DNA of 64,000 bases from Anthoceros angustus. Its lineage: Eukaryota > Plantae > Anthocerotophyta. Of this stretch, positions 17,952 to 56,600 are shown piece by piece. Numbering within the stretch: the first letter of the stretch is position 1; each line of letters opens with the position of its first letter. The position numbers were made by a program, and so were the translations under genes. Location: positions 868,001-932,000 of the forward strand of contig VJWM01000011.1 of assembly GCA_010909165.1 (NCBI GenBank), in the 5' to 3' direction. Under the pieces are notes generated by a model. The model had not been told where the DNA came from. It did not search any database and worked only from the letters and a program-made list of their open reading frames with translations.

Positions 17952-18610
17952 GTGCGATCCTGCCCTTCCATTCCAATAGCAGGCCGGTCAGGCCGTGGAG
18001 CCGTGCAGCCAGCGCGAGCGCACCCGGCTGGAGAAGATTGGATGTCGTTGCCGACGCAGATCTTGCCCGGACCCTGCTCCATCTCCTGCTCGCGTTGGCA
18101 AATTCCCCGCTTGCGTTTGCGGCCACGCCGCGTCCAGCTGCAGACCTGCTTGTCCCAACATTATATCAGAATGTGGATTAATATCGGTTTCTGGCAGAAG
18201 ATCCGCATGTTCTATCTGATGCAGAGCTTGATCAAGAAGCTTAATTCTTGTCTCGACACAGCTGGACCATCCACGTGCAGGGGAAACTTCCCTAGTCGCG
18301 GTCGCTACGCCGAAGAGCTTGCTGCTAACTTGTTGGCTCGATTCGATGAGTGCCACTGCCATGACAATTTTGCCGCAAGGCTCCGCCCGTCTCCATCTGC
18401 TCGGAGGCCTCCACCAGCTCCGAGAAGGGGAAGGGGCTCCACCTTGCCGCTGTCTAGGAAGCGTGTGAGCTGTGGAAGCAGTATGCCGGTCCGTTGGAAA
18501 CGACTATGAATCTGGTGGCAGGGGGGGCGGGGGGAGTGGAGCCGAGGGACCAGCGCTCCAGTGAGAGCCACAATTCCACCCTTCACTCCCTTGGCTGATT
18601 CGGACGCCAA

Positions 18611-31464: not shown

Positions 31465-31973
31465 CGCCGGCTAAATTCCACAATTCAGAATTTACACTTC
31501 CACAATCGAGCAATCGAGCAATCGAGCACTCGAGCTCTGCGCTGCTTTGCCGTACTAGGCTGCGCGCACAGGAGCGGAGCGTAGTGCCAAATCCAGACTG
31601 CCCACAAAGAAAGACGAATAGTTCTACATGGAGCGTAGAGCACTGCAGCAGAGTGGAGCTCAAGTGTGACAAAACTTCCAGACCAGATTCCCTTTCCCAC
31701 GACAGCTGAGAGAAAGATACACTTCACGCTCCGACAGCATGATAGAGAGAGAGGGGATGGTACTGTACATACATTCATGACTACGCCGGCCACCCAGCAT
31801 GCGTTTGCCTGCCTGCCTGCCTCCTGCTCCACTAATTACGAGCAGCGTTATGTAGCGTAAAGTCAGTCATTAGGAGCGGGCCGTCATAAGCGCGGGAAAT
31901 TGAAACGGCACAGTCACATGGTTGCATCATGCATAGCTATCGTATCGCATGTATGTATGTGTTGTACAACATG

Positions 31974-34143
31974 TCATGAGCTTGAGCTTCTCATGTGCTG
32001 CTGCACCATCTCCTGGGAGAAGGGGTAGAGGTGCGCTTCGCGGGTGCCCAGGAAGGTGCTCCAGATGAGGTGCACGCTCTCCAGCTTCGGGCACGCGCGC
32101 TGCAGGCTTGAAAGGTGCTCCAGGGACAGAGGCTGCCTTGATTCCAGTCGAAGCCGTTTCAGGGAAGGCAGGTTCCATGATTCGAACAGGCACAGCTGGA
32201 GGTCCGCGAACACGCCCAACGCTATGGCTGTTAGGGAGCCCAGGCCCTGCGCGCAAGAACACCAGAGCCCACATGACGTTGAGGTGCCTGACATGGGATG
32301 TGGAGTGATGGTATGTGGGAGGAGGGAGGGGGCCCTGGTGGATGGACCTTGAAGTATGAGGCGACTGCGGGAGGAAGGCCTGGGTCCGAAGGGGGCTCCA
32401 AGTCGCTGTGCAGGTCCATGGCCTGGGATGGAGGACGTTGTCAGATGAAGCGGCAGCCCGGACATCGAGTGAGATGTGCATGGAGGGAAGGACCCTGGAC
32501 TGTGCTTCTCACCTCCAGATTGGGGCAGGCTGCGGATAATGCTTCAAGAGTTGCCCCGGACAGTTCACATCGGTTGATTGCTAAGGCTTGGAGTGGTGGA
32601 GGGCCAGCTTGGATCAACGCCATCACTTCCTGCACATGTTGCACCACACACGTCGGCTGGCTCCGTTCCAGAAGGACAGAAACAGAGAGGACACTGCGTT
32701 CACTTGGTGTCTGACCTTGTCACCACACCTGGCGTGCTCGTGCCAAATGATTTCCGACTTCATCGACTGTCCAAAGGATCTGCGGAAAAGCTTGACAACT
32801 TCTTTGGTCAGCACATTTTTGGGGTATCAAGGTAAAGAAAGCTGGTGATGGCCATGACTTACGGCATTCGCAGTTCTATCGAAAGAGTGTTTAGCTTAGG
32901 GAGTGCTCCAAGCTCAGCCAAAATTCTCCGGTACACAGGTCTGAAGGTCACATGCTGGAGCCATTCAATAAGGCACAAGACACATGAGAAGAGGAAGGAA
33001 CTCCGAACACGATAAAGTGACCAGTATTTGTTCGGCACTGAAATCCACATACCTGCAACACAAGGGTCACGGAGGCCAGGTCAGGGCAGAGCTCATGGAT
33101 GTCTGTGAACGCTTTGTCAGAGAGCTGCCCACAGCCGCAGTGTGTCACGAGAGGCCCAGTCCTTTCGGACTGAATGTCTCCATTCTGGAGGAATCCAATG
33201 GTACGATTTGACTGCCGGCCTCCACAAACATGTTGCAGCCGCACTGTGTGCAGGCGTGGGCAGCTCTTCAGAATAAGCCTGTCATCAGAAATTTTTTCGA
33301 GCCATCAAAGAGTCGACCACCCTGGGCGAGCCTGCAACAATACCAAGCTAACCATCTATCACCAGCAACAGCGACAGGGATTTGGTAGACCTCGTGGTAT
33401 CAAGGAGGACAGGAAGCATCTTCATGGTGATGACAAAAACAAGGATGCCAGGAAATGACTCACTGCACTGTTTGATCGCTCAGGCGTGAGGAGCTCACAT
33501 CCACATCTCCCAAATACCTGTTGCGACAGACATTATCAGCCTCTCCATAACGTACGAAGAGGAAGCACACACTTGAACAACCAACACTGGCAGCTTCACC
33601 TCACCTTCCCATAACCATCTTTTCAGCAACAATCTCCAGAAAGTTGTTCCTGTGTACCAAAGACTGCATGGGAGACGGCGTGCGAGGAGAGCAACCAGCG
33701 TCATCCCACTGGGCCGGCAAAACGTCCACCTTCAAAGGCTTTAAAAGGGAACTCTGCAGGCTTCTTGGAGTTTTGAACTTGGCCAGAGGTGAGTGTGCTG
33801 CAGGGTTTATCCACTGCTTTGGAAGGGGCGTCTTCGGGTTCCTGGGAGGCACTGAAGTTTCGAAACCCTCCTTCCTCGGAACATCATCATCCAAAGCCCA
33901 GGACCGGAGCAGCGAGGAATCCAGAGCCACATCTCGCCATGTTCTGCACTTCGGAACCATGGTCAGCTTCCAGCTGCGTGCCGGAGCACTGGCCTGCTGA
34001 AGAAACGCACCACAAAATATCTTGACTTGCCGAGGCAGACAAACATACTTGCAGACAGCGGCCGCTGCCACCAGGTCCCTTGGGGCTGTCAGACGCTGGA
34101 TGATGAACGCCACAACGTCGCGGACACAAACCGCTGTTTCCAT
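31974..34143 (-). CDS. F-box/LRR (RNI-like) protein, multi-exon
   Basis: F-box-like N-terminus RDVVAFIIQRLTAPRDLVAAAAVCK|TWRDVA. LRR-like segments CPDLASVTL, LPKLNTLSIEL, LQALAINRCELS...ACPNLE, LPSLKRLRLE and ACPKLESVHL follow. Confidence 0.75.
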
Positions 34144-36527: not shown

Positions 36528-38653
36528 ATGGGTACAAAGCACAGCAAGGGAGGTAAACCACGTGAAGAGGAACATCTGAGTAAGGCCGTTGAGGTCCTGG
36601 ACCTGGTGCAGCCAGGGTGGTATATGTCCGCATCTATCTTCCATCAGGTCATCAAAAGGTGCATCGCACGCAAAGATCTGGTGCTGGCAGGGGTGTGCAT
36701 ACCCTGATTGTCAGAAGTGGGTATGTGGGCAGCAGATTCTTGGCTAATCACGCCATCCGCATGTATGCTGACTATGGGAGGTCGGAGGATGCGTTGCAGG
36801 TTTTTAATGGATTGGCTGCTCCCAATGCTTATTCGTGGTCCTCCATAATTGAGGCACAGGTTGACAATGGACAGGCTAGGCAGGCAATCGAGATGTATTT
36901 GAGGATGCGACAGTCATCCCCTCTGTTGGCAGACAATCATCTGTTTGTGGCAGCACTTAAGGTTTGTGCCCGTGCAGAAGATCTGACATCAGGCAGACAG
37001 GTCCATTCCGATGTCCTGAGTAGTGTGCTTGAGCCTGATGTGTTTGTTGGGAGCTGCCTGGTGGAAATGTATGCAAGATGTGGGAGGTTGGATGATGCTC
37101 GTACAATCTTTGATAAGTTGGACTCGAGAAATGTGGTCACATGGAATACGCTGCTTGGAGGGTATGCTGAGGGTGGGCGTGGGCAAGAAGCCCTTGCGCT
37201 CTATGCAAGTATGGCAAAGGAGGGAATCACTCTGCCTGACCATGTCACGTTTTTGTGCCTCCTCAAAGCATGTGGGTGGTAGCAGTGGAACACTACACCA
37301 GGGAATGCGGCTTCATTCACAAATACAGGAAGCAGGTGTAGGGCATTGGAGCAGGGAAGGCAGCTACATGACCAGTTTCAGGAGATGGGGCTGCAACTTG
37401 ACGTGGTCATTTCGAGCTGCCTGGTGGACATATATGCAAACTGTGGGAGCTTAGAGGATGCCCGCAGGGTGTTTGACGAGTCAGCCACAAGAGATGTCGT
37501 GACTTGGACTGCCATGCTCACTGCGTACGAGGAGCATGGTCTAAGCCAAGAAGCGCTGTCTCTGTACGTGGTTGTGGGCAGCTGCCTGGTGGACATGTAT
37601 GCGAAATGTGGGTGCTTGGATGATGCTCGGAGCGTGTTCGACACTCTGGATACCGGAGCCATCCTGACATGGAATGTGATGTCACCTCGTTCTTTGTGGG
37701 CAGGCTTTCAAACACTCTGCAGGCTCAGTCCAAGCTCCCGCATTTTGCATGCATGTTCACCAGCAGCTGCCCACAACCACATCCGCTTCCAAACATCTCT
37801 CTCGAACCTGAGCATGGAGCTGGTGCCCCGTGTGCAATGCTCCCATGCGAGCATTTGTGGGCTGCAGACGCACTACCAGATCGAAGACTTGTTCTCCGCG
37901 AGAGATACATTACTGTGCTTCCCAGCAGAGACATCAACATGGAAAGGAAAGAGTAGGCTGCATCGGCATACTTGACAAGAGCTCTTCTACCACTGTGAAG
38001 CGTCCGGCACGTACCAGGAGATCTATCATACAGGCATAGTGCTCAGCTCTGGGAGCTATCGCGTGATATCTGTCCACAAGTTTGAAGTACTGCAGTCCTT
38101 CACACACCAGGCCAGCATGACTGCAGGCAGTGAGAATTGAAAGGAATGTGAAAGAATTGAAAGGAATGTGGAATCGCCTGGACGCCTGCCATCACCATTT
38201 TGTCGTAGCACATGAGAGCTTCCTGACCCATCCCGTGCTGACCATACGCTGCAAGAAGAAGACGGGCGAATGCAACATGATCAGCGGGCGTGATTCCACG
38301 GTGATGCATGACGGCATAGAGATCAAGGGCCTCCTGCCCCAGCCCGTGCAAGACATATCCTGCGCAGCATACATGTTGATGTCATAGATGTACGCCGATG
38401 CGGGCCTTCCAGAGGACGCCCATAGGGTGGACAAGCGCAGGAAGACGGAAAGTGCTGCGTGGAAAGAGCCAGGCTGGAGCGGGATAGCGCATCCCGAGAA
38501 AGTGCGCACCTTCTGGCGGGCGGCGTCCAGAACTCACAGCATAGTCAAGTGTATGACATGTTAGCCGAGGTAACCTGTAAGCTTAAGGAGGCAGCACAGG
38601 CAAAGCAGAGCGTGTGCTCGGTATCCTCATCTCTGTCCGAGGGTCCCTCATGA
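36528..38653 (+). pseudogene. PLS-class PPR gene (E/E+ type), disrupted and internally inverted
   Basis: PPR motifs VGSCLVEMYARCGRLDDARTIFDKL..RNVVTWNTLLGGY and DVVTWTAML. About 37680-38360 encodes PPR/E-domain pieces on the minus strand. The E-domain tail MYADAG...KEPGWS resumes on + at 38388. In-frame stops are present. Confidence 0.85.
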
Positions 38654-39345
38654 TGCGTCCCTCTGCCTTCTACCACGTGCAGGTCTTGAGAAATGGATGG
38701 TGAGCAGTGTTCGAGGGTCCCTCATGATGCGTCCCTCTGCCCTCTACTACGTGCAGGTCTTGGGAAATGGATGGTGAGCATTGCTTCTGGGAAGCTACGT
38801 GCATCCACGCAAAGACAGCTCACCTTGAGAGCATCAGGTGGCACAGGAATATACCTGTTCTGTTGCACATAGCAGTCTTGGTGAGATGAAGAGCATTGCT
38901 TGACGTGGTGAAAAACGAGCCCAGCAAACAGTGTACGGATTCGGGCTGGACATCTCGCCTCCTCGAAACTATGGAATTCAGACACAGCTTGTCAGGAGTC
39001 GGTCTCATCCGATTCCTTTCATGAAAGGGCCATCTTCATGGACGAAAGAGAGAGAGTGCAGCGCTCCTGTAGTCCAAAATGTAGTCCGAAACCACTGGTG
39101 TCAGGCATGCCTCGTCGTGCAAAGTCTACAGTGGAGGCAGCTGCTTTATAACAAGTAGCTAGAGAGGCGCCTTTGCAGGCGTGCAGAAGTCGGGGGCGTG
39201 CAGCGCACGCCTCTCCGCGCCGCTGGCCAGCACTGGCCCAGCAGGAGTGGATTCGACTCTCTCTGGAGTGGGACGCCGTTGGTTCTGATTGCCTTCTTTT
39301 GCAAGTCCTCCAGACAGGGTGAGACGTTGTTGTGAAGGTTGGGCT

Positions 39346-42300
39346 ATGGCGGATCCATCTCTTCCTGCCGGCGCCGCGCCGGTGGACCTGCTCCAGAGCC
39401 TCGAGTCCCGCTCGCCGCACCTGCGTGCTTTGCTTGCAGACCTGGAGTCCCACTCGCGAAAGCCGTCGGAACTGCCGTCTGTCGATTCGTGGGGAAGCTA
39501 CTTCAATTGCGACTGCGAGGACGGGGAATGTCACCACCGCGAGGAATGGCACTGGGAGGTGCGCTTGCGTCTGCTCACAGCTATGGGCAGATGCCGGTCG
39601 CTCAGGACAATTCAACTGAATCCTCTGCGGAAGAGGGGTCACAGCGTGAGGCAGAACGAGGCGGTGGCGCTCTTATCAGGCTTGCAACACAACTTTGGGC
39701 TGAGGGAGCTGGATCTGTATGGCTACAAGGGTTTTGGGACGGCAGAAGCCTGCCTGACGGCACTGATTGCCGTCATCGACAGAACTTTTTCCTCACTGGA
39801 ATCCCTCGGTCTGCAATATGTGGGATTGAGTGTAGAAGGCCTGGGTGCCATCGCTGCAGCCCTTGGACGCAATGCCAGCTCATCAGTGCTGTCCAGCTTG
39901 TCTCTGTGTGGGAACGACATTGGGAATGCTGTCGGGGCGCAACACTTGGCCGACATCCTTACCAACTCGCCCAAGCTCCGCACACTCTCGATGAGCAACA
40001 TAGGGATGGACGAGGAAGGAGCCGTGGTGATTGCACAGGCCCTGGCGCATACCACACTGGCTGGGCTTAGAATCGGAGATCCTGCGCCCCGGAATCCAAA
40101 CCAGCGCGCGCCCATGTTCCTCGTTCCACTGCTCCATGCTTTGGTGTGGCACACCGTGGCGGATCCTCCAGCTGCTGTTTCTGGCAATCACTCCATCACA
40201 CGGCTTGACCTTGGGTGTCCGGGAGGCCAGGAGGCTGTGGAGCCGGGGCTGGGAGAAGCCCTGGCTCGGGTGCTTCGCACCAACCGGGCTCTGAAAGACC
40301 TCAAACTATCCAGCTTCTTCGTCACACGCGGATTGGGAGCTCTGCGGAAAACAGCAGCATCACCAAACTCCGGGTGATTCACTCGCCGCAGTCGGAGGAT
40401 GATGACATGGATCCCATGCTGACCACCATCCTGGATGAGTGCAAGATTGTTGAGCAGGTGCAGATCCAGTTTGACAAGCCCTTTGGTCCGTCCAGCTTCA
40501 CCAAGGCGTTTTTCCAAGGGTTCCTGCAGAAAAACCGCAGCATCAAGAGGCTGGTGTTGGATGGCTGGGATGGGCTGGACGAGGAGATGTTTGAAGACCT
40601 GATTCAATCCCTGTCCACCAACACCAACAGCTATCTCAGGCTGGATCACATCTCCATCAAGGGCACCTCATGGGAAAAGCAAGGCAGGGGCGAACGTCTG
40701 CAGAAGCGTTGAGATGCATTGCGAGTGCAGCCGGAGCTGGGTGCGTTGCTTGCAGACCTGGAGTCCCACTCGCCAGTGCTGCAGAAGCGTTGGGAGCTGC
40801 GTGCGTTGCTCGCAGACTTGGAGGACCCTGTTGAAGCTACTTCAATTGCGACTGCGAGGACGGGGAATGTCACCACCGCGAGGAATGGCACTGGGAGGTG
40901 CGCTTGCGTCTGCTCACAGCTATGGGCAGATGCCGGTCGCTGAGGAAGATTCGACTGAATCCTCCGGGAGATGGGTCACAGCGTGAGGCAGGACGAGGCG
41001 CTGGCGCTCTTATCAGGCTTGCAACACAACCTTGTGCTGGAGGAGCTGAATCTGTATGGCTACAAGGGTTTTGGGACGCCAGCAGCCTGCCTGCAGTTGA
41101 GTGCCATCATGGACAGAACTCATCCTCACTGGACTTGCTCGGTCTGCAACATCTGGGATTGAGTGCAGAAGGACTGGGTGCCATCGCTGCAGCCCTTGGA
41201 CGCAATGCCAGCTCATCAGTGCTGTCCAGATTGTCTCTGTGGGAACGACATTGGGAATGCTGTCGGGGCGCAACACTTGGCCGACATCCTTACCAACTCG
41301 CCCAAGCTCCGCATACTCTGGATGAGCAACATAGGGATGGACGAGGAAGGAGCCGTGGTGATTGCACAGGCCCTGGCGCATACCACCACACTGGCTGGGC
41401 TCAGAATCGGAGATCCTGCGCCCCGGAATCCAAACCAGCCGCGCCCATGTTCCTCGTTCCACTTGCTCCAAGCTTTGGTGTGGCACACCCTGGCGGATCC
41501 TCCAGCTGCTGTTTCTGGCAATCACTCCATCACACGGCTTGTCCTTGGGTGTCCGGGAGGCCAGGAGGCTGTGGAGCCGGGTCTGGGAGAAGCCCTGGCT
41601 CAGGTGCTTCGCACCAACCGGGCTCTGAAAGACCTCAAACTATCCAGCTTCTTCGTCACACGCGGATTGGGAGCTCTGCGGGAAAACAGCAGCATCACCG
41701 AACTCTGGGTGATTCACTCGCCCCAGTCGGAGGATGATGACATGGATCCCATCCTGACCACCATCCTGGATGAGAGCGAGACTGTTGTGAGGGTGTGGAT
41801 CCGATTTGACAAGCCCTTTGGTCCGTCCAGCTTCACCAAGGCGTTTTTCCAAGGGTTCCTGCAGAAAAACCGAAGCATCGAGAGGCTGGTGTTGAATGGC
41901 TGGGATGGGCTGGACGAGGAGATGTTTGAAGACCTGATTCAATCCCTGTCCACCAACACCAACACCCACCTCAGGCTGGATCACATCTCCATCAAGGGCA
42001 CCTCATGGGAAAAGCAAGGCAGGGGCGAACGTCTGAGAAAGCGTTGAGAGATGCATTGCGAGTGCAGCCGGAGCTGCGTGCGTTGCTCGCAGACTTGGAG
42101 TCCCACTCGCCAGTGCTGCACTATCTGTGGATTTGTGGGAAGCTACTTCAATTGCGACTGCCAGGACAGGGAATGTCACCACCGCGAGGAATGGCACTGG
42201 GAGGTGCGCTTGCGTCTGCTCACAGCTATCGGCAGATGCCGGTCGCTGAGGAAGATTCATCTGAATCCTCCGGAAGAGGGTCACAGCGTGAGGAGGACGA

Positions 42301-45300
42301 GGCGCTGGCGCTCTTATCAGGCTTGCAACACAACCTTGTGCTGGAGGAGCTGAATCTGTTTGGCTACAAGGGGTTTGGGACGGCAGCCTGCCTGCAGGCA
42401 CTGATTGCCGTCATCGACAGAACTCATCGCTCACTGGACTTCCTCGGTCTGCAATCTGTGGGATTGAGTGCAGAAGGACTGGGTGCCATCGCTGCAGCCC
42501 TTGGACGCAATGTCAGCTCTTCAGTGCTGTCCAGATTGTCTCTGTGTGGGAACGACATCGGAATGCTGTCGGGGCGCAACACTTGGCCGACATCCTTACC
42601 AAGTCGCCCAAGCTCCGCAATCTGGATGAGCAACATAGGCATGGACGAGGAAGGAGCCGTGGTGATTGCACAGGCCCTGGCGCATACCACTACACTGGCT
42701 GGGCTTAGAATCGGAGATCCTGCCCCGGAATCCAAACCAGCCCGCGCCCATGTTCCTCGTTCCATTGCTCCAAGCTTTGGTGTGGCACACCTGGCGGATC
42801 CTCCAGCTGCTGTTTCTGGCAATCACTCCATCACACGGCTTGTCCTTGAGTGTCCGGGAGGCCAGGAGGCTGTGGAGCCGGGCTGGGAGAAGCCCTGGCT
42901 CAGGTGCTTCGCACCAACCGGGCTCTGAAAGACCTCAGACTATCCAGCTTCTTCGTCACACGCGGATTGGGAGCTCTGCGAAAACAGCAGCATCACCAAA
43001 CTCCTGGTGTTTCACTCGCGGCAGTCGGAGGATGATGACATGGATCCCATCCTGACCACCATCCTGGATGAGTGCAAGACTGTTGAGGAGGTGCAGATCC
43101 GGTTTGACAAGCCCTTTGGTCCGTCCAGCTTCACCAAGGCGTTTTTCAAGGGTTGCTGCAGAAAACCGCAGCATCAACAGGCTGGTGTTGGATGGCTGGG
43201 ATGGGCTGGACGACGAGATGTTTGAAGACCTGATTCAATCCCTGTCCACCAACACCAACACCCACCTCAGGCTGGATCACATCTCCATCAAGGGCACCTC
43301 ATGGGAAAAGCAAGGCAGGGGCGAACGTCTGGAGAAAGCGTTGGGAGCTGCGCGAGTGCAGCCGCAGCTGCGTGCGTTGCTCGCAGACTTGGAGTCCGAG
43401 TCGCCAGTGCTGCAAGAACTCCCATCTGTGGATTTGTGGGAAGCTATTTCGATTGCCTTTGCCAGGAGGCCTACAGGGAGTGTCAACACCGGGGCAGTGG
43501 CAGTGGTACGTACGCCTGCGCCTGCTCACAGCTATCGGCAAATGCCGGTCGCTGAGGAAGATTCATCTGAATCCTCCGGGAGGAGGGGCACAGCGTGAGG
43601 GAGGTAGAGGCGCTGGCGCTCTGCTATCAGGCTTGCAACACAACCTTGTGCTGGAGGAGCTGAATCTGTATGGCTACAAGGGGTTTGGGACGGCAGCCTG
43701 CCTGCAGGCACTGAGTGCCGTCATCGACAGAACTATCTCACTGGACTTGCTCGGTCTGCAATCTGTGGGATTGAGTGCAGAAGGACTGGGTGCCATCGCT
43801 GCAGCCCTTGGACGCAATGCCAGCTCAGTGCTGTCCAGATTGTCTCTGTGTGGGAACGACATCGGAATGCTGTCGGGCGCAACACTTGGCCGACATCCTT
43901 ACCAACTCGCCCAAGCTCCGCAATCTGGATGAGCAACATAGGCATGGACGAGGAAGGAGCCGTGGTGATTGCACAGGCCCTGGCGCATACCACTACACTG
44001 GCTGGGCTTAGAATCGGAGATCCTGCGCCCCGGAATCCAAACCAGCCCGCGCCCATGTTCCTCGTTCCATTGCTCCAAGCTTTGGTGTGGCACACCCTGG
44101 CGGATCCTCCAGCTGCTGTTTCTGGCAATCACTCCATCACACGGCTTGTCCTTGAGTGTCCGGGAGGCCAGGAGGCTGTGGAGCCAGGGCTGGGAGAAGC
44201 CCTGGCTCAGGTGCTTCGCACCAACCGGGCTCTGAAAGACCTCACACTATCCAGCTTCTTCGTCACACGCGGATTGGGAGCTCTGCGGGAAAACAGCAGC
44301 ATCACCAAACTCCTGGTGTTCCACTCGCGGCAGTCGGAGGATGATGACATGGATCCCATGCTGACCACCATCCTGGATGAGTGCAAGACTGTTGAGGAGG
44401 TGCAGATCCGGTTTGACAAGCCCTTTGGTCCGTCCAGCTTCACCAAGGCGTTTTTCAAGGGTTGCTGCAGAAAACCGCAGCATCAACAGGCTGGTGTTGG
44501 ATGGCTGGGATGGGCTGGACGACGAGATGTTTGAAGACCTGATTCAATCCCTGTCCACCAACACCAACACCCACCTCAGGCTGGATCACATCTCCATCAA
44601 GGGCACCTCATGGGAAAAGCAAGGCAGGGGCGAACGTCTGGAGAGAGCGTTGTTAGCTGCGCGGCTGCAGCCGGAGCTGGCTGCCTTGCTTGCAGACTGG
44701 GAGTTGGGTGCGTTGCTCGCAGACTTGGAGTCCGAGTCGCCAGTGCTGCAAGAACTCCCATCTGTGGATTTGTGGGAAGCTATTTCGATTGCCTTTGCCA
44801 GGAGGCCTACAGGAGTGTCAACACCGGGGCAGTGGCAGTGGTACGTACGCCTGCGCCTGCTCACAGCTATCGGCAAATGCCGGTCGCTGAGGAAGATTCA
44901 TCTGAATCCTCCGGGAGGATGGGCACTTACAGCGTGAGGGAGGTAGAGGCGCTGGTGCTGCTATCAGGCTTGCAACACAACTCTGTGCTGGAGGAGCTGG
45001 GGCTGTTTGGCTACGTGGGCTTTGGGACGGCACGCTGCCTGCAGGCACTGACTGGCGTCGTGGAGAGAGCTTATGTCTCATTGGACTTGCTGGATCTGCG
45101 ATATCTGGGATTGAGTGCAGAAGGACTGGGTGTCATCGCTGCAGCCCTTGGACGCAACGGCAGCTCAGTGCTGTCCAGATTGCGTCTTTGTGGGAACGAC
45201 ATCAGGAATGCTGTCGGGCGCAACATTTGGCCGACATCCTGAGGAATTCGATCGCCCTCCGCAATCTCTGGATGAGCAATATTGGCATGGATGAGGAAGG

Positions 45301-48300
45301 AGCCGTGCTGATTGCAGAGGCCCTGGCGAATACCACCACCCTGATCCGAGCTTAGAATCGGAGATCCTGTGTTCATTGGTCCAATTCTCGAAGCTTTGGT
45401 GTGGCACACCTGGTGGATCCTCCAGCTGCTGTTTCTGGCAATCACTCCATCACAGGCTTGTTCTTGAGTGCCCAGGAGGCCAGCAGGCCGTGGAGCCAGG
45501 ACTGGGAGAAGCCCTGGCTCAGGTGCTGCGCACCAACCGTGCTCTCACTGACCTCAGACTTGCCAGCTTCTTCGTCACACGCGGATTGGAAGCGCTACCT
45601 GAAAACAGCAGCATCACCCAACTCCAAGTAAGTCACACGCGGAATTCGGAGGATGATGACATGGATCCTATGCTGATCACGATTCTTCAGGAGTGCAAGA
45701 ATGTCCAGCAGCTGCAGCTTCAGTTTATAAGCCCTTTGGTCCATCCAACTTCTCCAAGGCGTTTTTCCAAGGGTTGCGGGATAATCGTAGCATCAAGACG
45801 CTTGTGTTGGATGACTGCGAAGGATTGGATGACTACATGTTCCAGAACTTGATGCGGTCTCTGGGACGCAACTGCAACAACGTCCTGGAGAACATTTCCA
45901 TCAAGAAAACAACCTGGGAAAGCGAAGGCAAAGGAATATACATCCAGAATGCTCTCTCAAGGAACATGCGCAGAAGAAGCGCTGCTCCGCATGGTAGGTG
46001 CCCCAAGCCAGTAGCTAGCTACCCTTGTCCTGATTTGTATCTACAGTCAGAACCCACAAACTCAGATGTATACTGACCCCTTCTCACTTGTGCAGGTTCG
46101 GAAGAAGTGCCACCACCGGTCACGGCAACTGTGGCAACCTCTGATGCCGCAGCAGGTAATGAAACTACATGAATCCATGGATTTGATCCAACCACTTCCA
46201 AGCTGTTGTTGTTGTTGCAACTAGTTTGAATGCCTGTACCGAATGCACCACTTGATGCTGCTGCTGGCAGGCAGTCTGATGATTGACTGATTGGCTGTCT
46301 TTGTTTTCACCACAATTTCCAGTTGCTGTTCCTGAGGAGCTCAGTACCCTGCTTGCCGACCTCGACTCACCTTCGCCACACTCAGTAGTCTTCCTCGTGT
46401 GAAGCGTTTGGGCACTTGTTCAAGAGGGACGTGGAACATCCAAAGGTGGAACTTGAACTGCGCATGCGCCTTATGAAGGCTATCGGAAATGCCCCACACT
46501 CAGATTCATAGATCTCGACCCTCTTGGGCGTCGAAATTACAGGGTGACGGTGGCAGAGGCGATGGCGCTGCTGGAAGGCCTGAGCTCGAATGCAATAGTG
46601 GAACGGCTGGACTTGAGTGGCTTCCTTGGTTTTGGAACAGGTGAAGTCTGCGCTGCAATCGCCGCTATCTTGCAATCCAGCCGCACCTTGCAATTTCTGA
46701 ATATGGGATACACTGGCATGACTGTCGAAGGACTGGCTTGCATGCGAAATAATAGCAGCACTGTGCTTCGCACCTTGAACCTTTCTGGAAACACGACTGT
46801 TGGAGAAGGTGTAGGAGCTCAACACCTGGCTAATATCCTGACCAGCACTCCCGCGCTTCGCCACCTGGGGATGTGGGATATAGGGATGGATGAGGCGGGA
46901 GCATTGATGATAGGGGATGCTCTGGCACAGAACACCACACTTGACAGGCTGGACATAGGATTTAATCAAGCGTCAAGGCCAAACCAGGCAGGGATGATGG
47001 CCACGCTGTTAGTTCGAGCATTCCTCCCTACCAAATTTCTTTCTGGTAACAAGTCTGTCACACATCTCGGGCTGAAAGTATGGGAAGCAGGACAGCCTGT
47101 CATCCCTGAATTGCGAGAAGCTGTGGCCGCACGCTTCATGGGAACCATACTTGGAGGCATCTCGATGTATGTACCTGCTTTATAAGGCAGGGATTGGAGG
47201 GCTGTGTGACAACAGCAGCGTTATCCGTGTGACAGTCCGACATGGTAGCTCTAGTGCTGAGGAACAAGGGATGTGCAATCCTGCAGACAGTGGAAAAGTT
47301 TACAATTAGCTCAGAACAGTTTGGGACCTTTGGGATCATCCGACCTCCCAAGACGTTTTCAAATCGTTGCAGGACAATCGTTACCTCAACAGGTTGGTGT
47401 TGGATGGCTGGAAAGGGTTGGACGACAATATGTTCCAAGACCTGTTGCGGGCTCTGCAAGTGAACACCAATTTGAAGAGTATATCGTTCGAGAACACTGT
47501 GTGGAAAAGTCAGGAAAAGGAGCTGCAGTGGATGAACTACTACGCCAAAACAGGGAATACCGGAAAGCTCTGGCAGGGGCTCCAACAATGCCAGTGAAAT
47601 CATGTCGCCTCGTACTTTGTGGATTTCCATATGCAGGTGAGCACATGCTGAACCCAAAGTTTGTACATCCCAAATGGCGTAGTTTGTCAGACTTCACTGC
47701 AGTTGTTTCTGTCTTCTCACATCTGTTTTCTTGTCTTTATTGCCGTTGTTTTCGTCTCCGAGTGTAATCGGTGGTAAATGTTGCTGTTTCAGGAAAACCA
47801 CGATACGGAATACGTTGATGAGTATGCAAACACACGAAAACGATGTTGAGATGGAGGGTGAAACGATTTCGAAGCACATACCTCGAACCCTTGGGTTTGA
47901 GGTTGAGGTGATAAAAGATGGTCCAGCCTTGAGAATTACCGTTTGGGATCTTGCAGGGCACCAGGAGTTTCATGCTCTTCACGATTTCGTCTTTCCTGCT
48001 GTGAATAACTCTTCTCTCTTCTTGTTTGTCTATAACCCGTTCAAATTTGGTGGTAATTATTCAAGTGCGGAAATGAAGGATAGAAAGGATTTTCGAGATG
48101 AATTTATTTATTGGCTTAAATTTATTGCTTCCAACTCGCGGTTAGCTCAACAGGTGAAACCTTATGTTCATGTGGTGGTAACATTTGGTGACAAGCTTGA
48201 AGGTAGGATGTCTTCTTGAAATCTGAGGAAGTGTTGGTGATGAAGAAAAGTTCATGGCTGTTGTGGAAACATCCAATGAACCCACTTTCATCAATGGACA

Positions 48301-51300
48301 AAGTTGGAAAGATGTGTGTATACGCAGCCTTATAGAGGAAAAGCTACAACAACGTATTAGCATTGGCCCCAATTCCCAATATTTGTGAGCAGACCCGTAC
48401 ATGTACAAAGATGGGCTGAGGATCAACAAGGTATGCCAATCATTTCTGAGAAGTTTAGTGAGTTGTTTTAGCACATGTAAGGTGGCAGCATCCACTCATC
48501 TCGGAGGATTATGAAGATTTCTTAGAGACTTCATGGACAAAAGAGGATAGCTGGAAAGTAGTAGCATCATATCTCAAGGATTCAGGGGAGATCATATATT
48601 TTCAGATGTCGGAACTGATGGTCATCAATCTCCAATGGCTAGGAATGGGAGTTTTGGTCAGCTGATTAGTATATTTGGTGAACGGACAATAGCAGATTGG
48701 CTTCAAGTTCAAAATGGGTTTATCAGCAAATATGGGTTGAGTAGCCTTCTAAAATGTCTTTGAACAAGGTAGGGCTTGATGAAACCATTGTGAGCGAGGA
48801 AAAATTCATCCAACTGATGTGTGAGTTGCACCTTTGCATGAAAGTGGAGATGAGGAAGGAGAAGTGCGTTATTTTGTTCCAATATGTATGTATAAAGAAG
48901 AAGATTTATTAGGAGTTGATCAGCTTAGTATGGCCTTCACACGGTGGTAATCTTCATGATTATATCTTTATGGGTTTGCGTCTACAATGTGATGATCAAG
49001 ATTGTACATTCCTCACACCAGGATTTTTCCCTAGGTTACAGGTTGTAACTTTTCTCAAGTTGAATATCTTTTGTTTTATGTCCTGAAACTTCTTCTTTGT
49101 TTTATTATTATTAACTAGTCTCATTGTTCCTATATATTGTAGGTACTTTTATACACATATTGTTTGAAAATGAAGTGGGTTGATGAGGATAGACGAGGTG
49201 ATTCAGGAATAAAACTACAGCCTAATGTCCTTTTAATATCTGCAGAGGCAATGGATATCTTTGTGGAATTTAATGCCAAAGTGGGTTGTTACATAGATAT
49301 ATTGGCCCGATCTACTCAAGGCTATTTAGAGTCCATGTCATTTTGAAGGAACATATTGTATCTCGATTCGGGCATTTTGTGCTTCGCATGAGGGTTGTGC
49401 AGGGGTCACACTAGTTGAAGGTGTTCTTCGACATGAATGTGTAGCGTCCCTCACTCTATGCAGATACAGGAGATACGAGTGTATCCTGACGAACGAGCTA
49501 GTTGAAAGGGTGGCTGCTGCAAAAGATCAACGTCGTGCACACTCCACGCAATCTTGGAAGCCTGTTAGCGACAGCAACACCCTGGGCGATCCAATCATTT
49601 TAAAGGCCAACCATGAGTATGCAACGGTGGTGGATGGCCATGTCATTTTGGGACGAAAAGAGGACCTTGCCAAAGCCGAAGCAGAGTTCCAAGGTTTGAA
49701 GCTCTCAATTCTGTGGATAGTTTGTGTTGCAGTAGGTGTCCTTCTTCTCTTCACAAGTAGTTTCTAAGTAGCTTTGCACAAGTAGGCCGTTTCTTGCATA
49801 CTCTAAGGCTATACCTGTTGCAGGATTGAAATCCAGTAGTAGTTGCTTTGGTGGAACTCCTACACAGCTATCCCCGCAAGTAGGGAAGCTTGTGCGAAAG
49901 AGCAACTTGTTGAGTAGCCTTCTAAAATGTCTTTGAACAAGGTAGGGCTTGATGAAACCAATGTGAGCGAGGAAAAATTCATCCAATTAATGTGTGAGTT
50001 GCACCTTTGCTATGAAAGTGGAGATGTGGACGGAAAAACTCAATATTTTGTTCCAATAAGTATGTATAAAGAAGAAGATTTATTAGGAGTTGATCAACAG
50101 TTAGTATGGCCTTCACAGAGTCTGGATCATGATTATATCTTTATGGGTTTGCGTTTACAATGTGATGATCAAGATTGTACATTCCTCACACCAGGATTTT
50201 TTCCTAGGTTACAGGTTCGTAACTTTTCTAAAGTTGAATATCTTTTGTTTTATGTCCCTGAAAACTTATTCTTTAGTTTTTATCATTATTAACTACTGAC
50301 TAGTCTCATTGTTCCTATATATTGTAGGTTTTTTATACAAATATTGTTTGAAAATGAAGTGGGTTGATGAGGATAGACGAGGTGATTCAGGAATAAAACT
50401 ACAGCCTAATGTCCTTTTAATATCTGCAGAGGCAATGGATATCTTTGTGGAATTTAATGCCAAAGTGGGTTGTTACATAGATATATTGGCCCGATCTACT
50501 CAAGGCTATTTAGAGTCATGTCATTTTGAAGGAACATATTGTATCTCGATTCGGGCATTTTGTGCTTCGTATGAGGGTTGTGCAGGTCACATTGGTTGAA
50601 GGTGTTCTTCGACATGAATGTGGCATCCCTCACTCTATGCGACATAGGAGACACGAGTGTATCGACATAAGCTAGTTGAAAGCGGTGGCTGCAAAGGATC
50701 CGTCTGCACACTCCACGCAATCTTGGAGCGCACTGGGCGATCACTATTTTAAAGGCCAACCGAGAGTATGCAACGGTGGTGGATGGCCGCGTCATTTTGG
50801 GACAAAAAGAGGACCTTGCCAAAGCCGAAGCAGAGTTCCAAGGTTTGAAGCTCTCAATTCTGTGGATAGTTTGTGTTGCACTAGGTGTCCTTCTTCTCTT
50901 CACAAGTAGTTTCTAAGTAGCTTTGCACAAGTAGGCCGTTTCTTGCATACTCTAAGGCTATACCTGTTGCAGGATTGAAATCCAGTAGTAGTTGCTTTGG
51001 TGGAACTCCTACACAGCTATCCCCGCAAGTAGGGAAGCTTGTGCGAAAGAGCAACTTGATTTGAGTAGTTATCCTAACTCTAGCAGTATGGAAGAAGGTA
51101 ATCGAAGAGGTTTGGCAGTGGTTGTGAGTGCGGAAGAGGACAGACCGGGAGGATCTGTAGACAGAGGGCGACTTGATTTTCTTTTCAACACATTGGGCTT
51201 TCATACTGATTTTTAGTGGACAGTTCTGACAGTGTCAAAGCACACATGAGGAAAGTTGCCGATCTCTCTGCCCTTGAAAAGGACGATTGCTTTGTGTGTT

Positions 51301-51848
51301 GCATCAATGCTCATGGGGGGATTGAAGAAAATGGCAGAGACTACATTGAAATTGGAAAACCACCCCGGGAGAAGCTATATGTTTACGATGACATCGTGAA
51401 GCCCATTTGTGAATCCAAGTGGTTGAAAGACAAGCCTAAGGTGTTTCTGATCAATGCTTGTCGAGCCATCCAAAGTGGGAAAGCTAAGGACTCTGAAGTC
51501 GAGGGTAGCCAAATTGTGAGTGAGAGAGCCGGAGAAGATCTACGCCTGCTTTCTGAGAAGGATTGTCTCACCTTCTTCTCGACCAGTCATGGACAACAAT
51601 CGTTCAGAGATGTCAACAATGGCTCAAACTTTATCATAGCTTTGATGGAAGCCATCATTCAGGGGTCGGAAAGAAAGGATGATATGTTCAGCATTTTAAC
51701 ATCAGTGATTGCCAAGGTCACGGAGATGCCATGTTGGCTCCGAAATCAAGAAGGGTCCTATGAGAAGATACCCCAGTGTCCGGTGTTTTCCTCCACACTC
51801 ACGAGAAAGCTTTGGTGGTGGCCTCGGTGTGGCCATGTTCCTTCATAA
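39346..51848 (+). CDS. Giant TORNADO1-like ROCO protein: (LRR module)x6 - Roc GTPase - COR (duplicated) - caspase (peptidase C14A-like); frameshifted in this assembly
   Basis: ATG at 39346 (MADPSLPAG), then RI-like LRR modules. The Roc has P-loop CGFPYAG|KTT across intron 47637-47792, G2 RTLG, G3 WDLAGHQEFHALHD and YWLKFIASNS...VVVTFGDK. The COR has GLRLQCDDQDCTFLTPGFFPRLQV, a TRN1-like motif. The C-terminus is a caspase. All parts are on one strand and colinear. A continuous frame requires correcting many 1-2 nt indels. Confidence 0.75.
39420..45970 (+). repeat. Five tandem ~1.3-kb coding repeats (each ~430 aa of ribonuclease-inhibitor-like LRRs)
   Basis: Units start at about 39420, 40740, 42075, 43370 and 44705. 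Each runs LRALLADLES...VRLRLLTA.G.CRSLR.I.LN...GAQHLADIL...GMDEEGAVVIAQAL...EDDDMDP...ISIKGTSWE. A diverged sixth unit lies at about 46330-47560. Confidence 0.95.
47590..48300 (+). other. Roc (Ras of complex proteins) GTPase domain
   Basis: GxxxxGKT split by an intron (GFPYAG/KTT), RTxG switch I, WDLAG G3, and a TFGDK G4-like motif. Confidence 0.88.
48737..51068 (+). repeat. ~1.17-kb tandem duplication of the COR-coding region
   Basis: 48737-49910 matches 49911-51068. TTGAGTAG occurs at both ends and the junction. The copies differ by real substitutions (GDEEGEVRYF vs GDVDGKTQYF). Confidence 0.93.
51061..51848 (+). other. Caspase (CASc, p20+p10) catalytic domain
   Basis: RGLAVVV...DRPGGSVDRGRLDFLFNTLGF; DCFVCCINAHG (His codon 51312); LKDKPKVFLINACRA (Cys codon 51459); DCLTFFSTSHGQQSFRDVNNGSNFIIAL; ILTSV; PQCPVFSSTLTRKLWW. 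One -1 indel lies in a T-run at about 51210. Confidence 0.92.
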
Positions 51849-52435
51849 TAACCGGATTGTAATAGAATCATCGTTCCCAGCAAGACACTGTTGGTGCAGC
51901 GAATTGCTTCTAATATGGTCTTCTCATTTGTCCTTTTCTGTTCATTTCTTATTTAGGTTCGCACACAATTTGGATGATAAACGACTCCTTCTGTGGATGA
52001 ACCTGTAGGTGAGAGCTCATGGACTGTAAGGAGGAAAGAATGAGGGAGTTGTGGAGCTGTAGTTTAAGAAAGCAAGTCCAGATTTAAGCGTTCCTCTTAT
52101 CGAATGACTTCTAGTCCTTTTGCATACAAGATGTGTGTTCCATCTTCCTGAGCAGTCCATGCATGAACAGGATGTCCCTCACTTAAATCGCGTCTGAGGC
52201 TTGCCATCCTGTCCCTCACTTAAATCACGTCCGAGGCTTGCCTTTCTTTCACGAGGACAAAAGACAGAGCGCGGACAGTAGGTCATATGGTGCCAAACCA
52301 TCGTCTCCGGTGTTAGGGCTATGGAATTTTCGCTGTTGAAATCTGGATTAGGTTACTTTTCATGCATCACCGACAACACGAACTTGTTTGTAAGGTAGTG
52401 CTGTCCTTCCGGTTGTGCTGACGTCATCCATCATC

Positions 52436-54005
52436 TGCATGTATGCTGCCTGCGGGAGGTTGGAGGATGCGTTGCAGGTTTTTAATGGATTGGCTGCTCC
52501 CAATTCTTATTCGTGGTCCTCCATAACGGAAGCAGATGTTGGCAATGTACAGGCCAGGCAGGCAATCGAGATCTATTTGAGGATGCGACAGTCATCCCCT
52601 ATGCTGGCAGATAATCATCTGTTTGTGGCAACACTTAAGGCTTGAGCCAGTGCAGAAGATCTGACATCAAGGAGACAGGTCCATGTCGATGTCCTGAATA
52701 GTGTGCTTGAGCCTGATGTATTTGTCAGGAGCTGCCTGGAGGAAATGTATGCAAGATGTGGGAGGTTGGATGATGCTCGCACGATCTTTGACAAGTTGGA
52801 CTGGAGAATGTGGTCACATGGAATACGCTGCTTGGAGGGTATGCAGGGTGGGCGTGGGCAAGAAGCCCTTGCGCTCTATGCAAGTATGCAAGAGGAGGGA
52901 ATCACTCTACCTGACCCTGTCACGTTTTTGTGCCTCCTCAAAGCATGTGGTAGCAGTGGAACACAACACCAGGGAGTGCAGCTTCATTCACAAATACAGG
53001 AAGCAGGTCTCGGATCTGAGGTGATGGTGGGAAGCTGCCTCGTAGATATGTATGCAAGATGTGGAAGCTTGGATGATGCCCGGACTGCCTTTGACAACAT
53101 GACCAGAAGAAATGTGGTGACCTGGAACGTGATGCTCGCAGCATATGCTGATCGTGGGCTAGGTGAAGAAGCCCTGTCTCTTTATGCAACAATGCAACAA
53201 GAGGACGTTACTTCAGCAGATGACATAACTTTTGTGTGCATTCTGAAAGCATGTAAAAGCATCGGGCCATTGGAGCAGGGAAGGCAGCTACATGACAAGT
53301 TTCAGGAGATGGGGCTGCAAGTTGACGTGGTCATTTCGAGCTGCCTGGTGGACATATATGCAAACTGTGGAAGCTTAGAGGATGCCCGCAGGGTGTTTGA
53401 CGAGTCAGCCACAAGAGATGGCAGTGTATGGTCAGCACGGGATGGGTCAGGAAGCTCTCATGTGCTACGACAAAATGGTGGTGGTAGGCATCTGGTGTGG
53501 GAAGGTTTGCAGTACTTCAAATCCATGAACAGATATCACGGGATAGCTCCCAGAGCTGAGCACTATGTCTGTATGATAGATCTCCTGGGACGTGCTGGAC
53601 GCTTCAAAGTGGTAGAAGAGCTCTTGTCAAGTATGCCGATGCAGCCTACTCTTTCCTTTCCATGTTGATGTCTCTGCTGGGCTTCCTGCAGGAAGCACAG
53701 TAATGTATCTCTCGCGGAGAACAAGTCTTCGATCTGGCGGTGCGTCTGCAGCCCACAAATGCCGCAGCATACATGTTGATGTCATAGATGTACGCTGATG
53801 CGGGCCTTCCAGAGGACGCCCATAGGGTGGACAAGCGCAGGAAGACGGAAAGTGCTGCGTGGAAAGAGCCAGGCTGGAGCTGGATAGCGCATCCCGAGAA
53901 AGTGTATGACATGTTAGCCGAGGTAACCTGTAAGCTTAAGGAGGCAGCACAGGCAAAGCAGAGCGTGTGCTCGGTATCCTCATCTCTGTCCGAGGGTCCC
54001 TCATG
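52436..54005 (+). pseudogene. Second copy of the PLS-class PPR (E-type) gene, with stops and deletions
   Basis: Paralogous to 36760-38650. Motifs include MVGSCLVDMYARCGSLDDARTAFDNMTRRNVVTWNVML, PRAEHYVCMIDLLGRAG and KEPGWSWI. In-frame TAA and TAG stops occur in the E domain. Confidence 0.85.
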
Positions 54006-54019
54006 ATGCGTCCCTCTGC

Positions 54020-56107
54020 CCTCTACTACGTGCAGGTCTTGGGAAATGGATGGTGAGCATTGCTTCTGGGAGGCTACGTGCATCCACGCAAAGACAGCTC
54101 ACCTTGAGAGCATCAGGTGGCACAGGAATATACCTGTTCTGTTGCACATAGCAGTCTTGGTGAGATGAAAGAGCATTGCTTGACGTGGTGAAAAACGAGC
54201 CCAGCAAACAGTGTACGGATTCGGGCTGGACATCTCGCCTCCTTGAAACTATGGAATTCAGAGACAGCTTGTCAGGAGTCGGTCTCATCCGGTTCCTTTC
54301 ATGGACGAAAGAGAGAGATTGCAGTGGCACTCCTGAGGCTGAAAGCCACTCACAAGGCAGCCGACGAAGCACAGAAAAATGTAGTCCGAAACCACTGATG
54401 TCAGGAATGCCTTGTCGTGCAAAGTCTACAGTGTACACAGGTGTGTAACAAGTGGCTAGAGAGGCGGCTTCGCAGGCGTGCAGAAGTTGCTCCACTGCAC
54501 GCTTCTCCGCGCCGCTGGCCAGCACTGGGCCAGCAGGTGTGGATTCGAGTCTCTCTGGAGTGGGATGTTGTGGGTTCTGCTTGGCTTCTTTTGCAAGTCC
54601 TCCTGACAAGGTGGGACGTTGTTGTGAAGGTTGGGCTATGGCGGATCCATCTCTTCCTGCCGGCGCCGCGCCGGTGGACCTGTTGCAGAGCCTCGAGTCC
54701 CGCTCGCCGCAGCTGCGTGCTTTGCTTGCAGACCTGGAGTCCTCCTGCCGTCTGTCGATTCGTGGGAAGCTACTTCAATTGTGACTGCGAGGACGGGGAA
54801 TGTCACCACCGCGAGGAATGGCACTGGGAGGTGCGCTTGCGTCTGCTCACAGCTATGGGCAGATGCGGGTCGGTCAGGAGGATTCGACTGAATCCTCTGC
54901 GGAAGAGGGTCACAGCGTGAGGCAGGACGAGGCGGTGGCGCTCTTATCAGGCTTGCAACACAACCTTGGGCTGAGGGAGCTGGATCTGTTTGGCTACAAG
55001 GGTTTTGGGACGGCAGCAGCCTGCCTGCAGTTGAGTGCCATCATGGACAGAACTCATCCCCCTCTACTACGTGCAGGTCTTGGGAAATGGATGGTGAGCA
55101 TTGCTTCTGGGAGGCTACGTGCATCCACGCAAAGACAGCTCACCTTGAGAGCATCAGGTGGCACAGGAATATACCTGTTCTGTTGCACATAGCAGTCTTG
55201 GTGAGATGAAAGAGCATTGCTTGACGTGGTGAAAAACGAGCCCAGCAAACAGTGTACGGATTCGGGCTGGACATCTCGCCTCCTTGAAACTATGGAATTC
55301 AGAGACAGCTTGTCAGGAGTCGGTCTCATCCGGTTCCTTTCATGGACGAAAGAGAGATTGCAGTGGCACTCCTGAGGCTGAAAGCCACTCACAAGGCAGC
55401 CGACGAAGCACAGAAAAATGTAGTCCGAAACCACTGATGTCAGGAATGCCTTGTCGTGCAAAGTCTACAGTGTACACAGGTGTGTAACAAGTGGCTAGAG
55501 GCGGCTTCGCAGGCGTGCAGAAGTTGCTCCACTGCACGCTTCTCCGCGCCGCTGGCCAGCACTGGGCCAGCAGGTGTGGATTCGAGTCTCTGGAGTGGGA
55601 TGTTGTGGGTTCTGCTTGGCTTCTTTTGCAAGTCCTCCTGACAAGGTGGGACGTTGTTGTGAAGGTTGGGCTATGGCGGATCCATCTCTTCCTGCCGGCG
55701 CCGCGCCGGTGGACCTGTTGCAGAGCCTCGAGTCCCGCTCGCCGCAGCTGCGTGCTTTGCTTGCAGACCTGGAGTCCTCCTGCCGTCTGTCGATTCGTGG
55801 GGAAGCTACTTCAATTGTGACTGCGAGGACGGGGAATGTCACCACCGCGAGGAATGGCACTGGGAGGTGCGCTTGCGTCTGCTCACAGCTATGGGCAGAT
55901 GCGGGTCGGTCAGGAGGATTCGACTGAATCCTCTGCGGAAGAGGGGTCACAGCGTGAGGCAGGACGAGGCGGTGGCGCTCTTATCAGGCTTGCAACACAA
56001 CCTTGGGCTGAGGGAGCTGGATCTGTTTGGCTACAAGGGTTTTGGGACGGCAGCAGCCTGCCTGCAGTTGAGTGCCATCATGGACAGAACTCATCCCCCA
56101 CTCTACT
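54020..56107. repeat. ~1.04-kb direct tandem duplication (upstream region plus first part of LRR gene)
   Basis: 54020-55060 matches 55061-56107. CTCTACT occurs at both ends and the junction. Confidence 0.93.
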
Positions 56108-56600
56108 CCCTCGGTCTGCAATATGTGGAATTGAGTGCAGAAGGCCTGGGTACCATCGCTGCAGCCCTTGGACGCAATGTCATCTTATCAGAGTCTGGAA
56201 GCCACAGTGGGCTGTCCGCATTGTCTCTGTGTGGGAAGGACATCGGGAATGTTGTCGGGGCGCAACACTTGGCCGACATCCTTACCAACTCGCCCAACCT
56301 CCGCAGACTCTCAATGAGCAACATAGGTATGGACGAGGAAGGAGCCGTGGTGATTGCACAGGCCCTGGCGCATACCACCACACTGGCCGAGCTCACAATC
56401 GGAGATCCTGCGCCCTGGAATCCAATGTGGCCACGTGGAGTACGCTGCTTGCAGATTAATGCTCAGGGCGGCCGTGGGCAAGAAGCCCTTGCCCTCCATG
56501 CTAGGATGCAAGAGGAGGGAATCCGTCTGCCTGGTCAGCCATGTCATGTTTGTGTGCCTCCTAAACGCATAGAGCCCTACACCAGGGGCGGCAGCTTCAT
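54638..56600 (+). pseudogene. Truncated paralogues of the ROCO LRR N-terminus (starts at 54638 and 55673); the second is fused to a PPR fragment
   Basis: Identical MADPSLPAGAAPVDLLQSLESRSP start. LRR homology stops at about 56424, where PPR-derived sequence (NVATWSTLLA / QGGRGQEALALHARMQEEGI) begins. Confidence 0.85.

What the first reader, a model, noticed from the sequence alone, without database searches (positions are those of the whole stretch)
39420..45970. LRR macro-repeats vary mainly at solvent-exposed xxLxLxx positions
Seen: the units are near-identical in scaffold and linker regions, but the beta-strand residues change between copies. Examples are LRTIQLN/LRKIRLN/LRKIHLN; LRELDLY/LEELNLY/LEELNLF/LEELGLF; LESLGLQY/LDLLGLQH/LDFLGLQS/LDLLDLRY; LRTLSMS/LRILWMS/LRNLWMS; TRLDLG/TRLVLG/TRLVLE; LKDLKLS/LKDLRLS/LKDLTLS/LTDLRLA; ITKLRVI/ITELWVI/ITKLLVF/ITQLQVS; VEQVQIQ/VVRVWIR/VEEVQIR; IKRLVLD/IERLVLN/INRLVLD. 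Established: hypervariability on the concave LRR face marks diversifying selection in immune receptors. Inference: each ~430-aa module is a distinct ligand-binding variant, giving a multi-specificity sensor.
Basis: partly seen in the sequence, partly recalled or inferred. Interest (0 to 1): 0.85.

Follow-up and report, generated by a model that had tools for sequence, protein, structure and literature searches.

The report
Repeated sensor domains with fast-changing faces
A gene of a hornwort-like plant carries five tandem copies of a whole sensor domain whose likely binding face has changed much faster than chance allows, as in immune receptors, but the gene is broken as assembled and no binding partner is known.

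Summary
Observation confirmed; interpretation partly supported. Five head-to-tail ~1.3 kb units (U1-U5, 39346-45993) each encode a whole ribonuclease-inhibitor-type LRR domain. Downstream lie a diverged sixth unit, Roc-COR and a caspase domain. All nine quoted motif series are in the sequence. In U1-U4, 23/60 exposed beta-strand sites vary against 43/342 elsewhere (p 6e-6); 0/36 buried leucine sites vary. My own codon models give dN/dS 3.1-3.8 at these sites against 0.6-0.8 elsewhere (M8 vs M8a p 9e-10). Simulated neutral evolution, gene conversion or double hits reach this in at most 0.2% of runs. Frameshifts are mostly 1-2 base gaps, and short-read contigs fill several; no aligned codon is a stop. 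Limits: U3 and U4 differ at only 3/60 face sites, so not every unit is a distinct variant. U2's variants are not shown read-covered, and one U1 variant is contradicted. No ligand is known, so 'multi-specificity sensor' is inference. The signature is textbook for NLRs and known in brown-algal ROCOs; I found no paper on it in land-plant TORNADO1-like genes or on whole-domain copies inside one gene. The scan already noted this architecture and this variable face at other loci of this genome.

The parts
39346..40729 (+). U1: start codon, N-cap and about 13 RI-type LRRs; first copy of the whole LRR domain
   Evidence: AF2 model pLDDT 84.6; RI/NLR-type LRR fold
40730..42066 (+). U2: second copy; differs from U1 at 19/60 face sites, three of them changes to Trp; its variants are not shown covered by short-read contigs
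   Evidence: AF2 model of its 3' part pLDDT 79.6
42067..43360 (+). U3: third copy; 3' half nearly identical to U4
   Evidence: contigs over LRR2-4
43361..44704 (+). U4: mosaic copy, N-cap like U5 and remainder like U3; the U3-U4 junction is in frame and lies in short-read contigs
   Evidence: records 4 and 13
44705..45993 (+). U5: older, more diverged copy (81-86% nucleotide identity to U1-U4)
46096..46155 (+). Inferred 60-base linker exon between two GT-AG introns (45994-46095, 46156-46322) that keep the frame from U5 into U6; not tested with RNA
   Evidence: read from the sequence
46323..47560 (+). U6: diverged sixth LRR domain next to Roc (45% amino-acid identity to U1 over 228 residues)
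47600..48215 (+). Roc GTPase; P-loop split by an inferred intron (47637-47792)
   Evidence: Pfam Roc E 9e-6, 26.4 bits against cut-off 27; tblastn E 2e-24 to P0153 and P0155
48216..51068 (+). COR and following region; frameshifted as assembled, with a 1.2 kb internal tandem duplication (48736-49917 / 49909-51068, 91%)
51088..51848 (+). Caspase domain with His and Cys dyad motifs; one frame break near 51213
   Evidence: Pfam Peptidase_C14 E 1.6e-23; best PDB matches caspase-8, -6, -7, -3
55675..56425 (+). P55: truncated paralogue (N-cap to LRR7) that runs into a PPR-like fragment; a shorter copy of it lies at 54640-55060
   Evidence: a contig carrying P55's letters was laid on U1 (record 10)

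Best explanation
The array is the sensor end of one large cytoplasmic LRR-Roc-COR-caspase protein (roughly 3,700 residues if the breaks are assembly errors). Unequal crossing-over multiplied the whole capped LRR domain, and gene conversion mixed segments between copies and paralogous loci. Positive selection then changed the exposed residues of the concave beta sheet while the core stayed fixed. The likely driver is a changing foreign ligand (pathogen or symbiont molecules). Binding to any one horseshoe would release or cluster the Roc-COR switch, whose dimerisation brings two caspase domains together. SHOWN: unit structure, fold type, position and excess of amino-acid changes, mosaic ancestry, order of domains. 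INFERRED: one intact protein, ligand binding, different specificities, dimer-driven caspase activation, an immune role.
For: dN/dS 3.1-3.8 at x against 0.6-0.8 elsewhere for U1-U4; x>1 with p 1e-4 to 4e-7 under shared dS and p about 0.03 when x gets its own dS; holds with segment-wise trees and double hits. M2a/M1a p 1e-8, M8/M7 p 1e-8, M8/M8a p 9e-10; 11/60 x sites against 8/311 others have posterior above 0.8. Null simulations reach the observed pN(x)/pS of 3.8 in at most 2 of 1000. Synonymous change is not raised at the strands' own L codons (2/36 against 10/241), which argues against imported diverged tracts. No stop among aligned codons or in about 400 aligned Roc-COR residues. Relatives carry one such domain before Roc-COR. 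Concave-face selection in ROCO LRRs of brown algae: PMC3341825, PMC11378527. COR-mediated dimerisation: PMC4104024.
Against: The gene is broken as assembled: at least 25 one- or two-base gaps in the array and 9 frameshifts in Roc-COR, plus an internal COR duplication. Reads fill only some gaps and no contig spans the array. U3 and U4 have nearly the same face. With U5 included, dN/dS at x falls to 1.7-2.0 (p 0.002 and 0.049). Only 4-6 related sequences; own model code, not PAML. No ligand or activity data.
Confidence: 0.55

Rival explanations
1. Variant pool or by-product: the faces were diversified by selection across a family of paralogous genes, and this array is a recombination product that stores or trades variants by gene conversion. 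It may be decaying, or only some units work.
For: Mosaic units: U4 is U5-like at the N-cap and U3-like after it; U2 shares a codon deletion and neighbouring changes with P55. Contigs show further variants not in the window (records 1 and 9). Truncated paralogues lie at 54.6-56.4 kb and remnants at 58.1-59.4 kb. dN/dS outside the face is high, 0.6-0.8.
Against: No stop codon in the aligned units; the U3-U4 and U4-U5 junctions are in frame; the three x differences between the youngest pair U3/U4 are still enriched (3/59 against 2/261, p 0.045).
Confidence: 0.25
2. One ligand class, many grips: the copies raise avidity for, or track variants of, a single fast-changing target, or act as decoys, rather than recognising unrelated ligands.
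For: U3 and U4 are near-duplicates; LRR7 and LRR13 faces are invariant in U1-U4 and 37 of 60 x sites do not vary.
Against: U1, U2 and U3 differ at a quarter to a third of face sites, with radical changes such as Ser/Trp, Arg/Trp/Leu and Asp/Val.
Confidence: 0.13
3. Relaxed constraint only: exposed strand residues drift neutrally while the rest is conserved.
For: Exposed sites usually vary more; few synonymous changes make dS uncertain; the own-dS test is only p about 0.03.
Against: Rejected by the shared-dS test, M8/M8a and simulations; polar non-strand sites vary far less.
Confidence: 0.05
4. Assembly artefact: false duplication plus consensus errors create the units and their differences.
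For: The assembly is error-rich here; the runs hold only 35-41% of sampled words; U1's Thr at LRR2 is not backed and U2's variants are not shown covered.
Against: Errors would not follow the beta-strand register. Short-read contigs span the U3-U4 junction with no mismatch and carry different face variants of U1, U3, U4 and U5.
Confidence: 0.02

Closest known systems
TORNADO1 (TRN1)-type plant Roco proteins
   Same: RI-type LRRs before Roc-COR (PMC4104024). The single-unit relative P0153 scores 0.99 to a 'protein TORNADO 1' cluster in the Atlas, and the window matches P0153 along LRR, Roc and COR.
   Different: TRN1 has one LRR domain and is known from leaf patterning. Here the domain stands six times, its face is under positive selection, and a caspase follows.
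Brown-algal LRR-ROCO genes (Ectocarpus, Saccharina)
   Same: Roco proteins with positively selected sites on the concave LRR face, proposed as immune receptors (PMC3341825, PMC11378527).
   Different: They shuffle single 24-residue LRR exons. Here the unit is a capped domain of about 13 repeats, there is no intron in the 6.6 kb array, and an effector protease is fused.
Plant NLR and LRR resistance genes
   Same: dN/dS above 1 at xxLxLxx x positions, unequal crossing-over and gene conversion (established knowledge; e.g. PMC3113787 came up, abstract start only).
   Different: No NB-ARC; the switch is Roc-COR. The variants sit inside one reading frame rather than only in separate paralogues or alleles.
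Bacterial AP-GTPase (Roco) conflict systems
   Same: Rapidly evolving N-terminal LRRs, Roc-COR, and a variable C-terminal effector (PMC8195603).
   Different: Eukaryotic, intron-containing, multiplied LRR domain; descent from these systems was not tested.

Membership tests
Roco, TRN1-like | N-terminal ribonuclease-inhibitor-type LRRs | tested here: met
Roco, TRN1-like | Roc GTPase followed by COR | tested here: met
   broken by frameshifts as assembled
Roco, TRN1-like | single LRR domain, about 1,400 residues, no enzyme tail | tested here: not met
   six LRR domains and a caspase
Roco, TRN1-like | orthology to Arabidopsis TRN1 by phylogeny | not tested
   only an Atlas name for relative P0153
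Plant NLR | NB-ARC domain | tested here: not met
   the slot after the LRRs holds Roc-COR
Plant NLR | positive selection at xxLxLxx x positions | tested here: met
Brown-algal LRR-ROCO | one LRR per exon, exon shuffling | tested here: not met
   U1-U5 align codon for codon without introns
Brown-algal LRR-ROCO | selected sites on the concave face | tested here: met
   facing direction taken from the motif register, no solvent-accessibility computation
Multi-specificity immune receptor | units bind different ligands and trigger a response | not testable with these tools
   needs binding and activation assays
Caspase (C14A-like) | His-Cys dyad in a caspase fold, closest to true caspases | tested here: met
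   the usual Gln before the catalytic Ala-Cys-Arg is Asn here; activity untested

The most novel reading that the evidence does not exclude
A land-plant, non-NLR immune receptor in which several independently diversified whole LRR domains in one chain feed one Roco GTPase switch and a true caspase, so that one gene detects several ligands and executes the response itself.
Probability: 0.3. Interest if true: 0.85.

Novelty: new variant of a known kind. Interest (0 to 1): 0.6.

Why it matters
Plant Roco proteins are known only as developmental regulators, and plants are said to lack true caspases (own knowledge). A firm arms-race signature on the LRR face is sequence-level evidence that these hornwort Roco-caspase genes are receptors for something that changes. 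It also names the residues and units to test. Near-identical scaffolds with different faces are a natural swap series for finding the ligand and for asking how ligand binding gates a Roc-COR switch, an open point for the whole Roco family. The selection signature itself is ordinary for LRR receptors.

Tried and rejected
The search for homologous proteins gave nothing for U1, for P0153 1-480 or for the caspase piece; it sees only proteins of similar length, so these blanks say nothing. Top HMMER hits to U1 are fish NLRC5-like and RI-like proteins matching generic repeats; not taken as close kin. Paper searches found nothing on hornwort or bryophyte TRN1-like or Roco-caspase genes. The first null simulation had too high a pS and was redone. 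Contig depth was not used as copy number or expression. Run X2 is only guessed to be RNA and no intron lay in the stretch laid, so transcription is not claimed.

Full report
What is there. Self-comparison shows five tandem units of about 1.3 kb from 39.4 to 45.9 kb, partial copies at 54.7 and 55.7 kb, and weaker matches at 46.8-47.4 and 58.9-59.4 kb. Downstream lie a diverged sixth unit (45% identical to U1), a Roc GTPase and COR and a caspase domain whose best solved relatives are animal caspases 8, 6, 7 and 3. PPR genes flank the locus. The one named plant protein among the ten U1 hits looked up comes from the hornwort Nothoceros aenigmaticus, so the genome is probably a hornwort (inference).

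What a unit is. Full-coverage relatives P0023, P0071 and P0067 carry one such domain directly before Roc-COR. They share the N-terminal cap and the C-terminal helix with each unit here. The relative P0153 is TORNADO1-like by Atlas features. So each repeat is the entire sensor domain with its own caps, not a run of extra LRRs. AlphaFold models of U1 and of U2's 3' part give alternating helix and short strand, the strands falling on positions 3 to 5 or 7 of each LxxLxLxx. The closest structures are RI, NLRP, NOD2 and designed LRR solenoids. That the x side chains face the concave side follows from the established LRR register; I did not compute solvent accessibility.

The observation. All nine motif series are present. 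Among U1-U4, 23 of 60 x sites vary, none of 36 L sites, and 43 of 306 others (x against all 342 others: p 6e-6). Positions 3, 5 and 7 carry most of it. The excess holds after masking uncertain zones, against polar non-strand sites, and without U2 or without U1. A sliding mask peaks in register with the two-residue alternation of a strand.

Selection. I wrote GY94 codon models, since PAML is not available. For U1-U4, dN/dS is 3.1-3.8 at x and 0.6-0.8 elsewhere. The test of x above 1 gives p 1e-4 to 4e-7 with shared dS and about 0.03 when x has its own dS, with one tree or segment-wise trees, with or without double hits and P55. Adding the older U5 lowers x to 1.7-2.0. Site models blind to the labelling give M2a/M1a p 1e-8, M8/M7 p 1e-8 and M8/M8a p 9e-10, with about 18% of sites at 6.7. 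Of sites with naive posterior above 0.8, 11 are x sites and 8 are not, most of the latter in loops where the alignment is uncertain. Because recombination inflates such tests, I simulated neutral x sites with conversion tracts, short tracts from a diverged donor and double hits: at most 2 in 1000 runs reach the observed ratio of 3.8. Synonymous change at the strands' own leucine codons is not raised. Selection on these residues is therefore the best reading. The sample is small and related.

Is it an artefact? The frame breaks are almost all one- or two-base deletions. Ten of 25 touch a run of three or more equal bases against 17% by chance, and several recur at the same column in different units, as long-read consensus errors do. 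Short-read contigs put letters back at 42559, 42620, 43437, 43490, 44470 and 44825 and restore the frame around 43577-43616. No aligned codon is a stop, nor any in about 400 Roc-COR residues that hold 9 frameshifts, while the ANTH gene at 50-1465 is intact. Contigs of both runs (one sample) cross the U3-U4 junction without mismatch. They also carry U1's LRR4, U3's LRR2-4, U4's LRR2 and LRR7-11 and U5's LRR6 variants with no listed difference at those sites (table 8 read with table 3). Against this, no contig backs U1's Thr at 39607-39609, the listed pieces do not cover U2's variants, none spans the array, and the runs hold only 35-41% of the words. So polishing does not remove the differences where it could be checked; intactness of the whole gene is likely but unproven.

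How it arose and works. U4 is U5-like in its cap and U3-like beyond; U2 shares a codon deletion and neighbouring changes with P55; contigs show further variants. This is unequal crossing-over with conversion inside the array and between loci. The most likely function is a sensor-switch-protease: ligand binding on a horseshoe relieves or clusters Roc-COR, COR dimerises (PMC4104024), and the caspase domains are brought together, as initiator caspases need (own knowledge). U6, diverged and next to Roc, may be the regulatory copy and U1-U5 the free sensors (inference). I put this model at 0.55, a variant pool or by-product at 0.25, avidity for one ligand class at 0.13, relaxed constraint at 0.05 and artefact at 0.02.

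Comparison. It works like plant NLRs and brown-algal ROCOs, where selected sites map to the concave face (PMC3341825, PMC11378527), and it has the layout of bacterial AP-GTPase conflict proteins (PMC8195603). It is a Roco protein of TRN1-like type but not a plain TRN1 (six LRR domains, caspase), not an NLR (no NB-ARC), and it does not shuffle single-LRR exons. I found no paper on this in land plants; the library is incomplete. The scan's own unchecked notes report the same architecture at many loci of this genome and the same variable face between other paralogues. These agree but are not independent support.

Verdict. A real, statistically firm signature of diversifying selection on whole LRR domains repeated inside one Roco-caspase gene: a new variant of a known kind, interest 0.6. 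The multi-specificity claim remains a testable inference.

Noticed in passing
window 51088-51848: Caspase domain closest to animal caspases, with dyad motifs and Arg residues at the usual Asp-pocket places by eye, but Asn in place of the usual Gln before the catalytic motif.
   Followed up: partly
window 48736-49917 and 49909-51068: 1.2 kb tandem duplication inside the COR region (91%, 38 mismatches, many short gaps); real or a false duplication of the assembly.
   Followed up: partly
window 36754-40099 and 52432-56425: A block of PPR gene, upstream DNA and first LRR unit is duplicated (85-97% in pieces); the second copy breaks off after LRR7 into a PPR-like fragment.
   Followed up: partly
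window 54019-55068 / 55060-56107 and 23350-24624 / 24604-25866: Near-perfect tandem duplications (99% and 98.5%), possibly assembly artefacts.
   Followed up: no
window 58097-59400: Two fused, decayed LRR-unit remnants; tblastn shows one in-frame stop.
   Followed up: partly
window 39502-39545 and equivalents in each unit: Cys/His-rich loop in the N-cap (three Cys and one or two His within about twelve residues), absent from the single-unit relatives aligned; possible metal site; occurs in two block versions.
   Followed up: no
window 41690-41810 (U2 LRR10-11): Dense cluster of in-frame changes that puts two Trp on the face; not shown covered by short-read contigs.
   Followed up: partly
window 50-1465, 33601-34143: Intact ANTH-domain gene; weak F-box-like match.
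   Followed up: no
window 21871-31672, minus strand: Long ORFs without Pfam match (432 and 335 residues), probably exons of one large gene; from memory they resemble GMI1/SMCHD1-like proteins, untested.
   Followed up: no
window 17827-17952: Perfect 18-copy array of a 7-base unit.
   Followed up: no
L001, L002, L004: TRN1-like relatives with one LRR domain and Roc-COR; no caspase match in the C-terminal parts scanned.
   Followed up: partly
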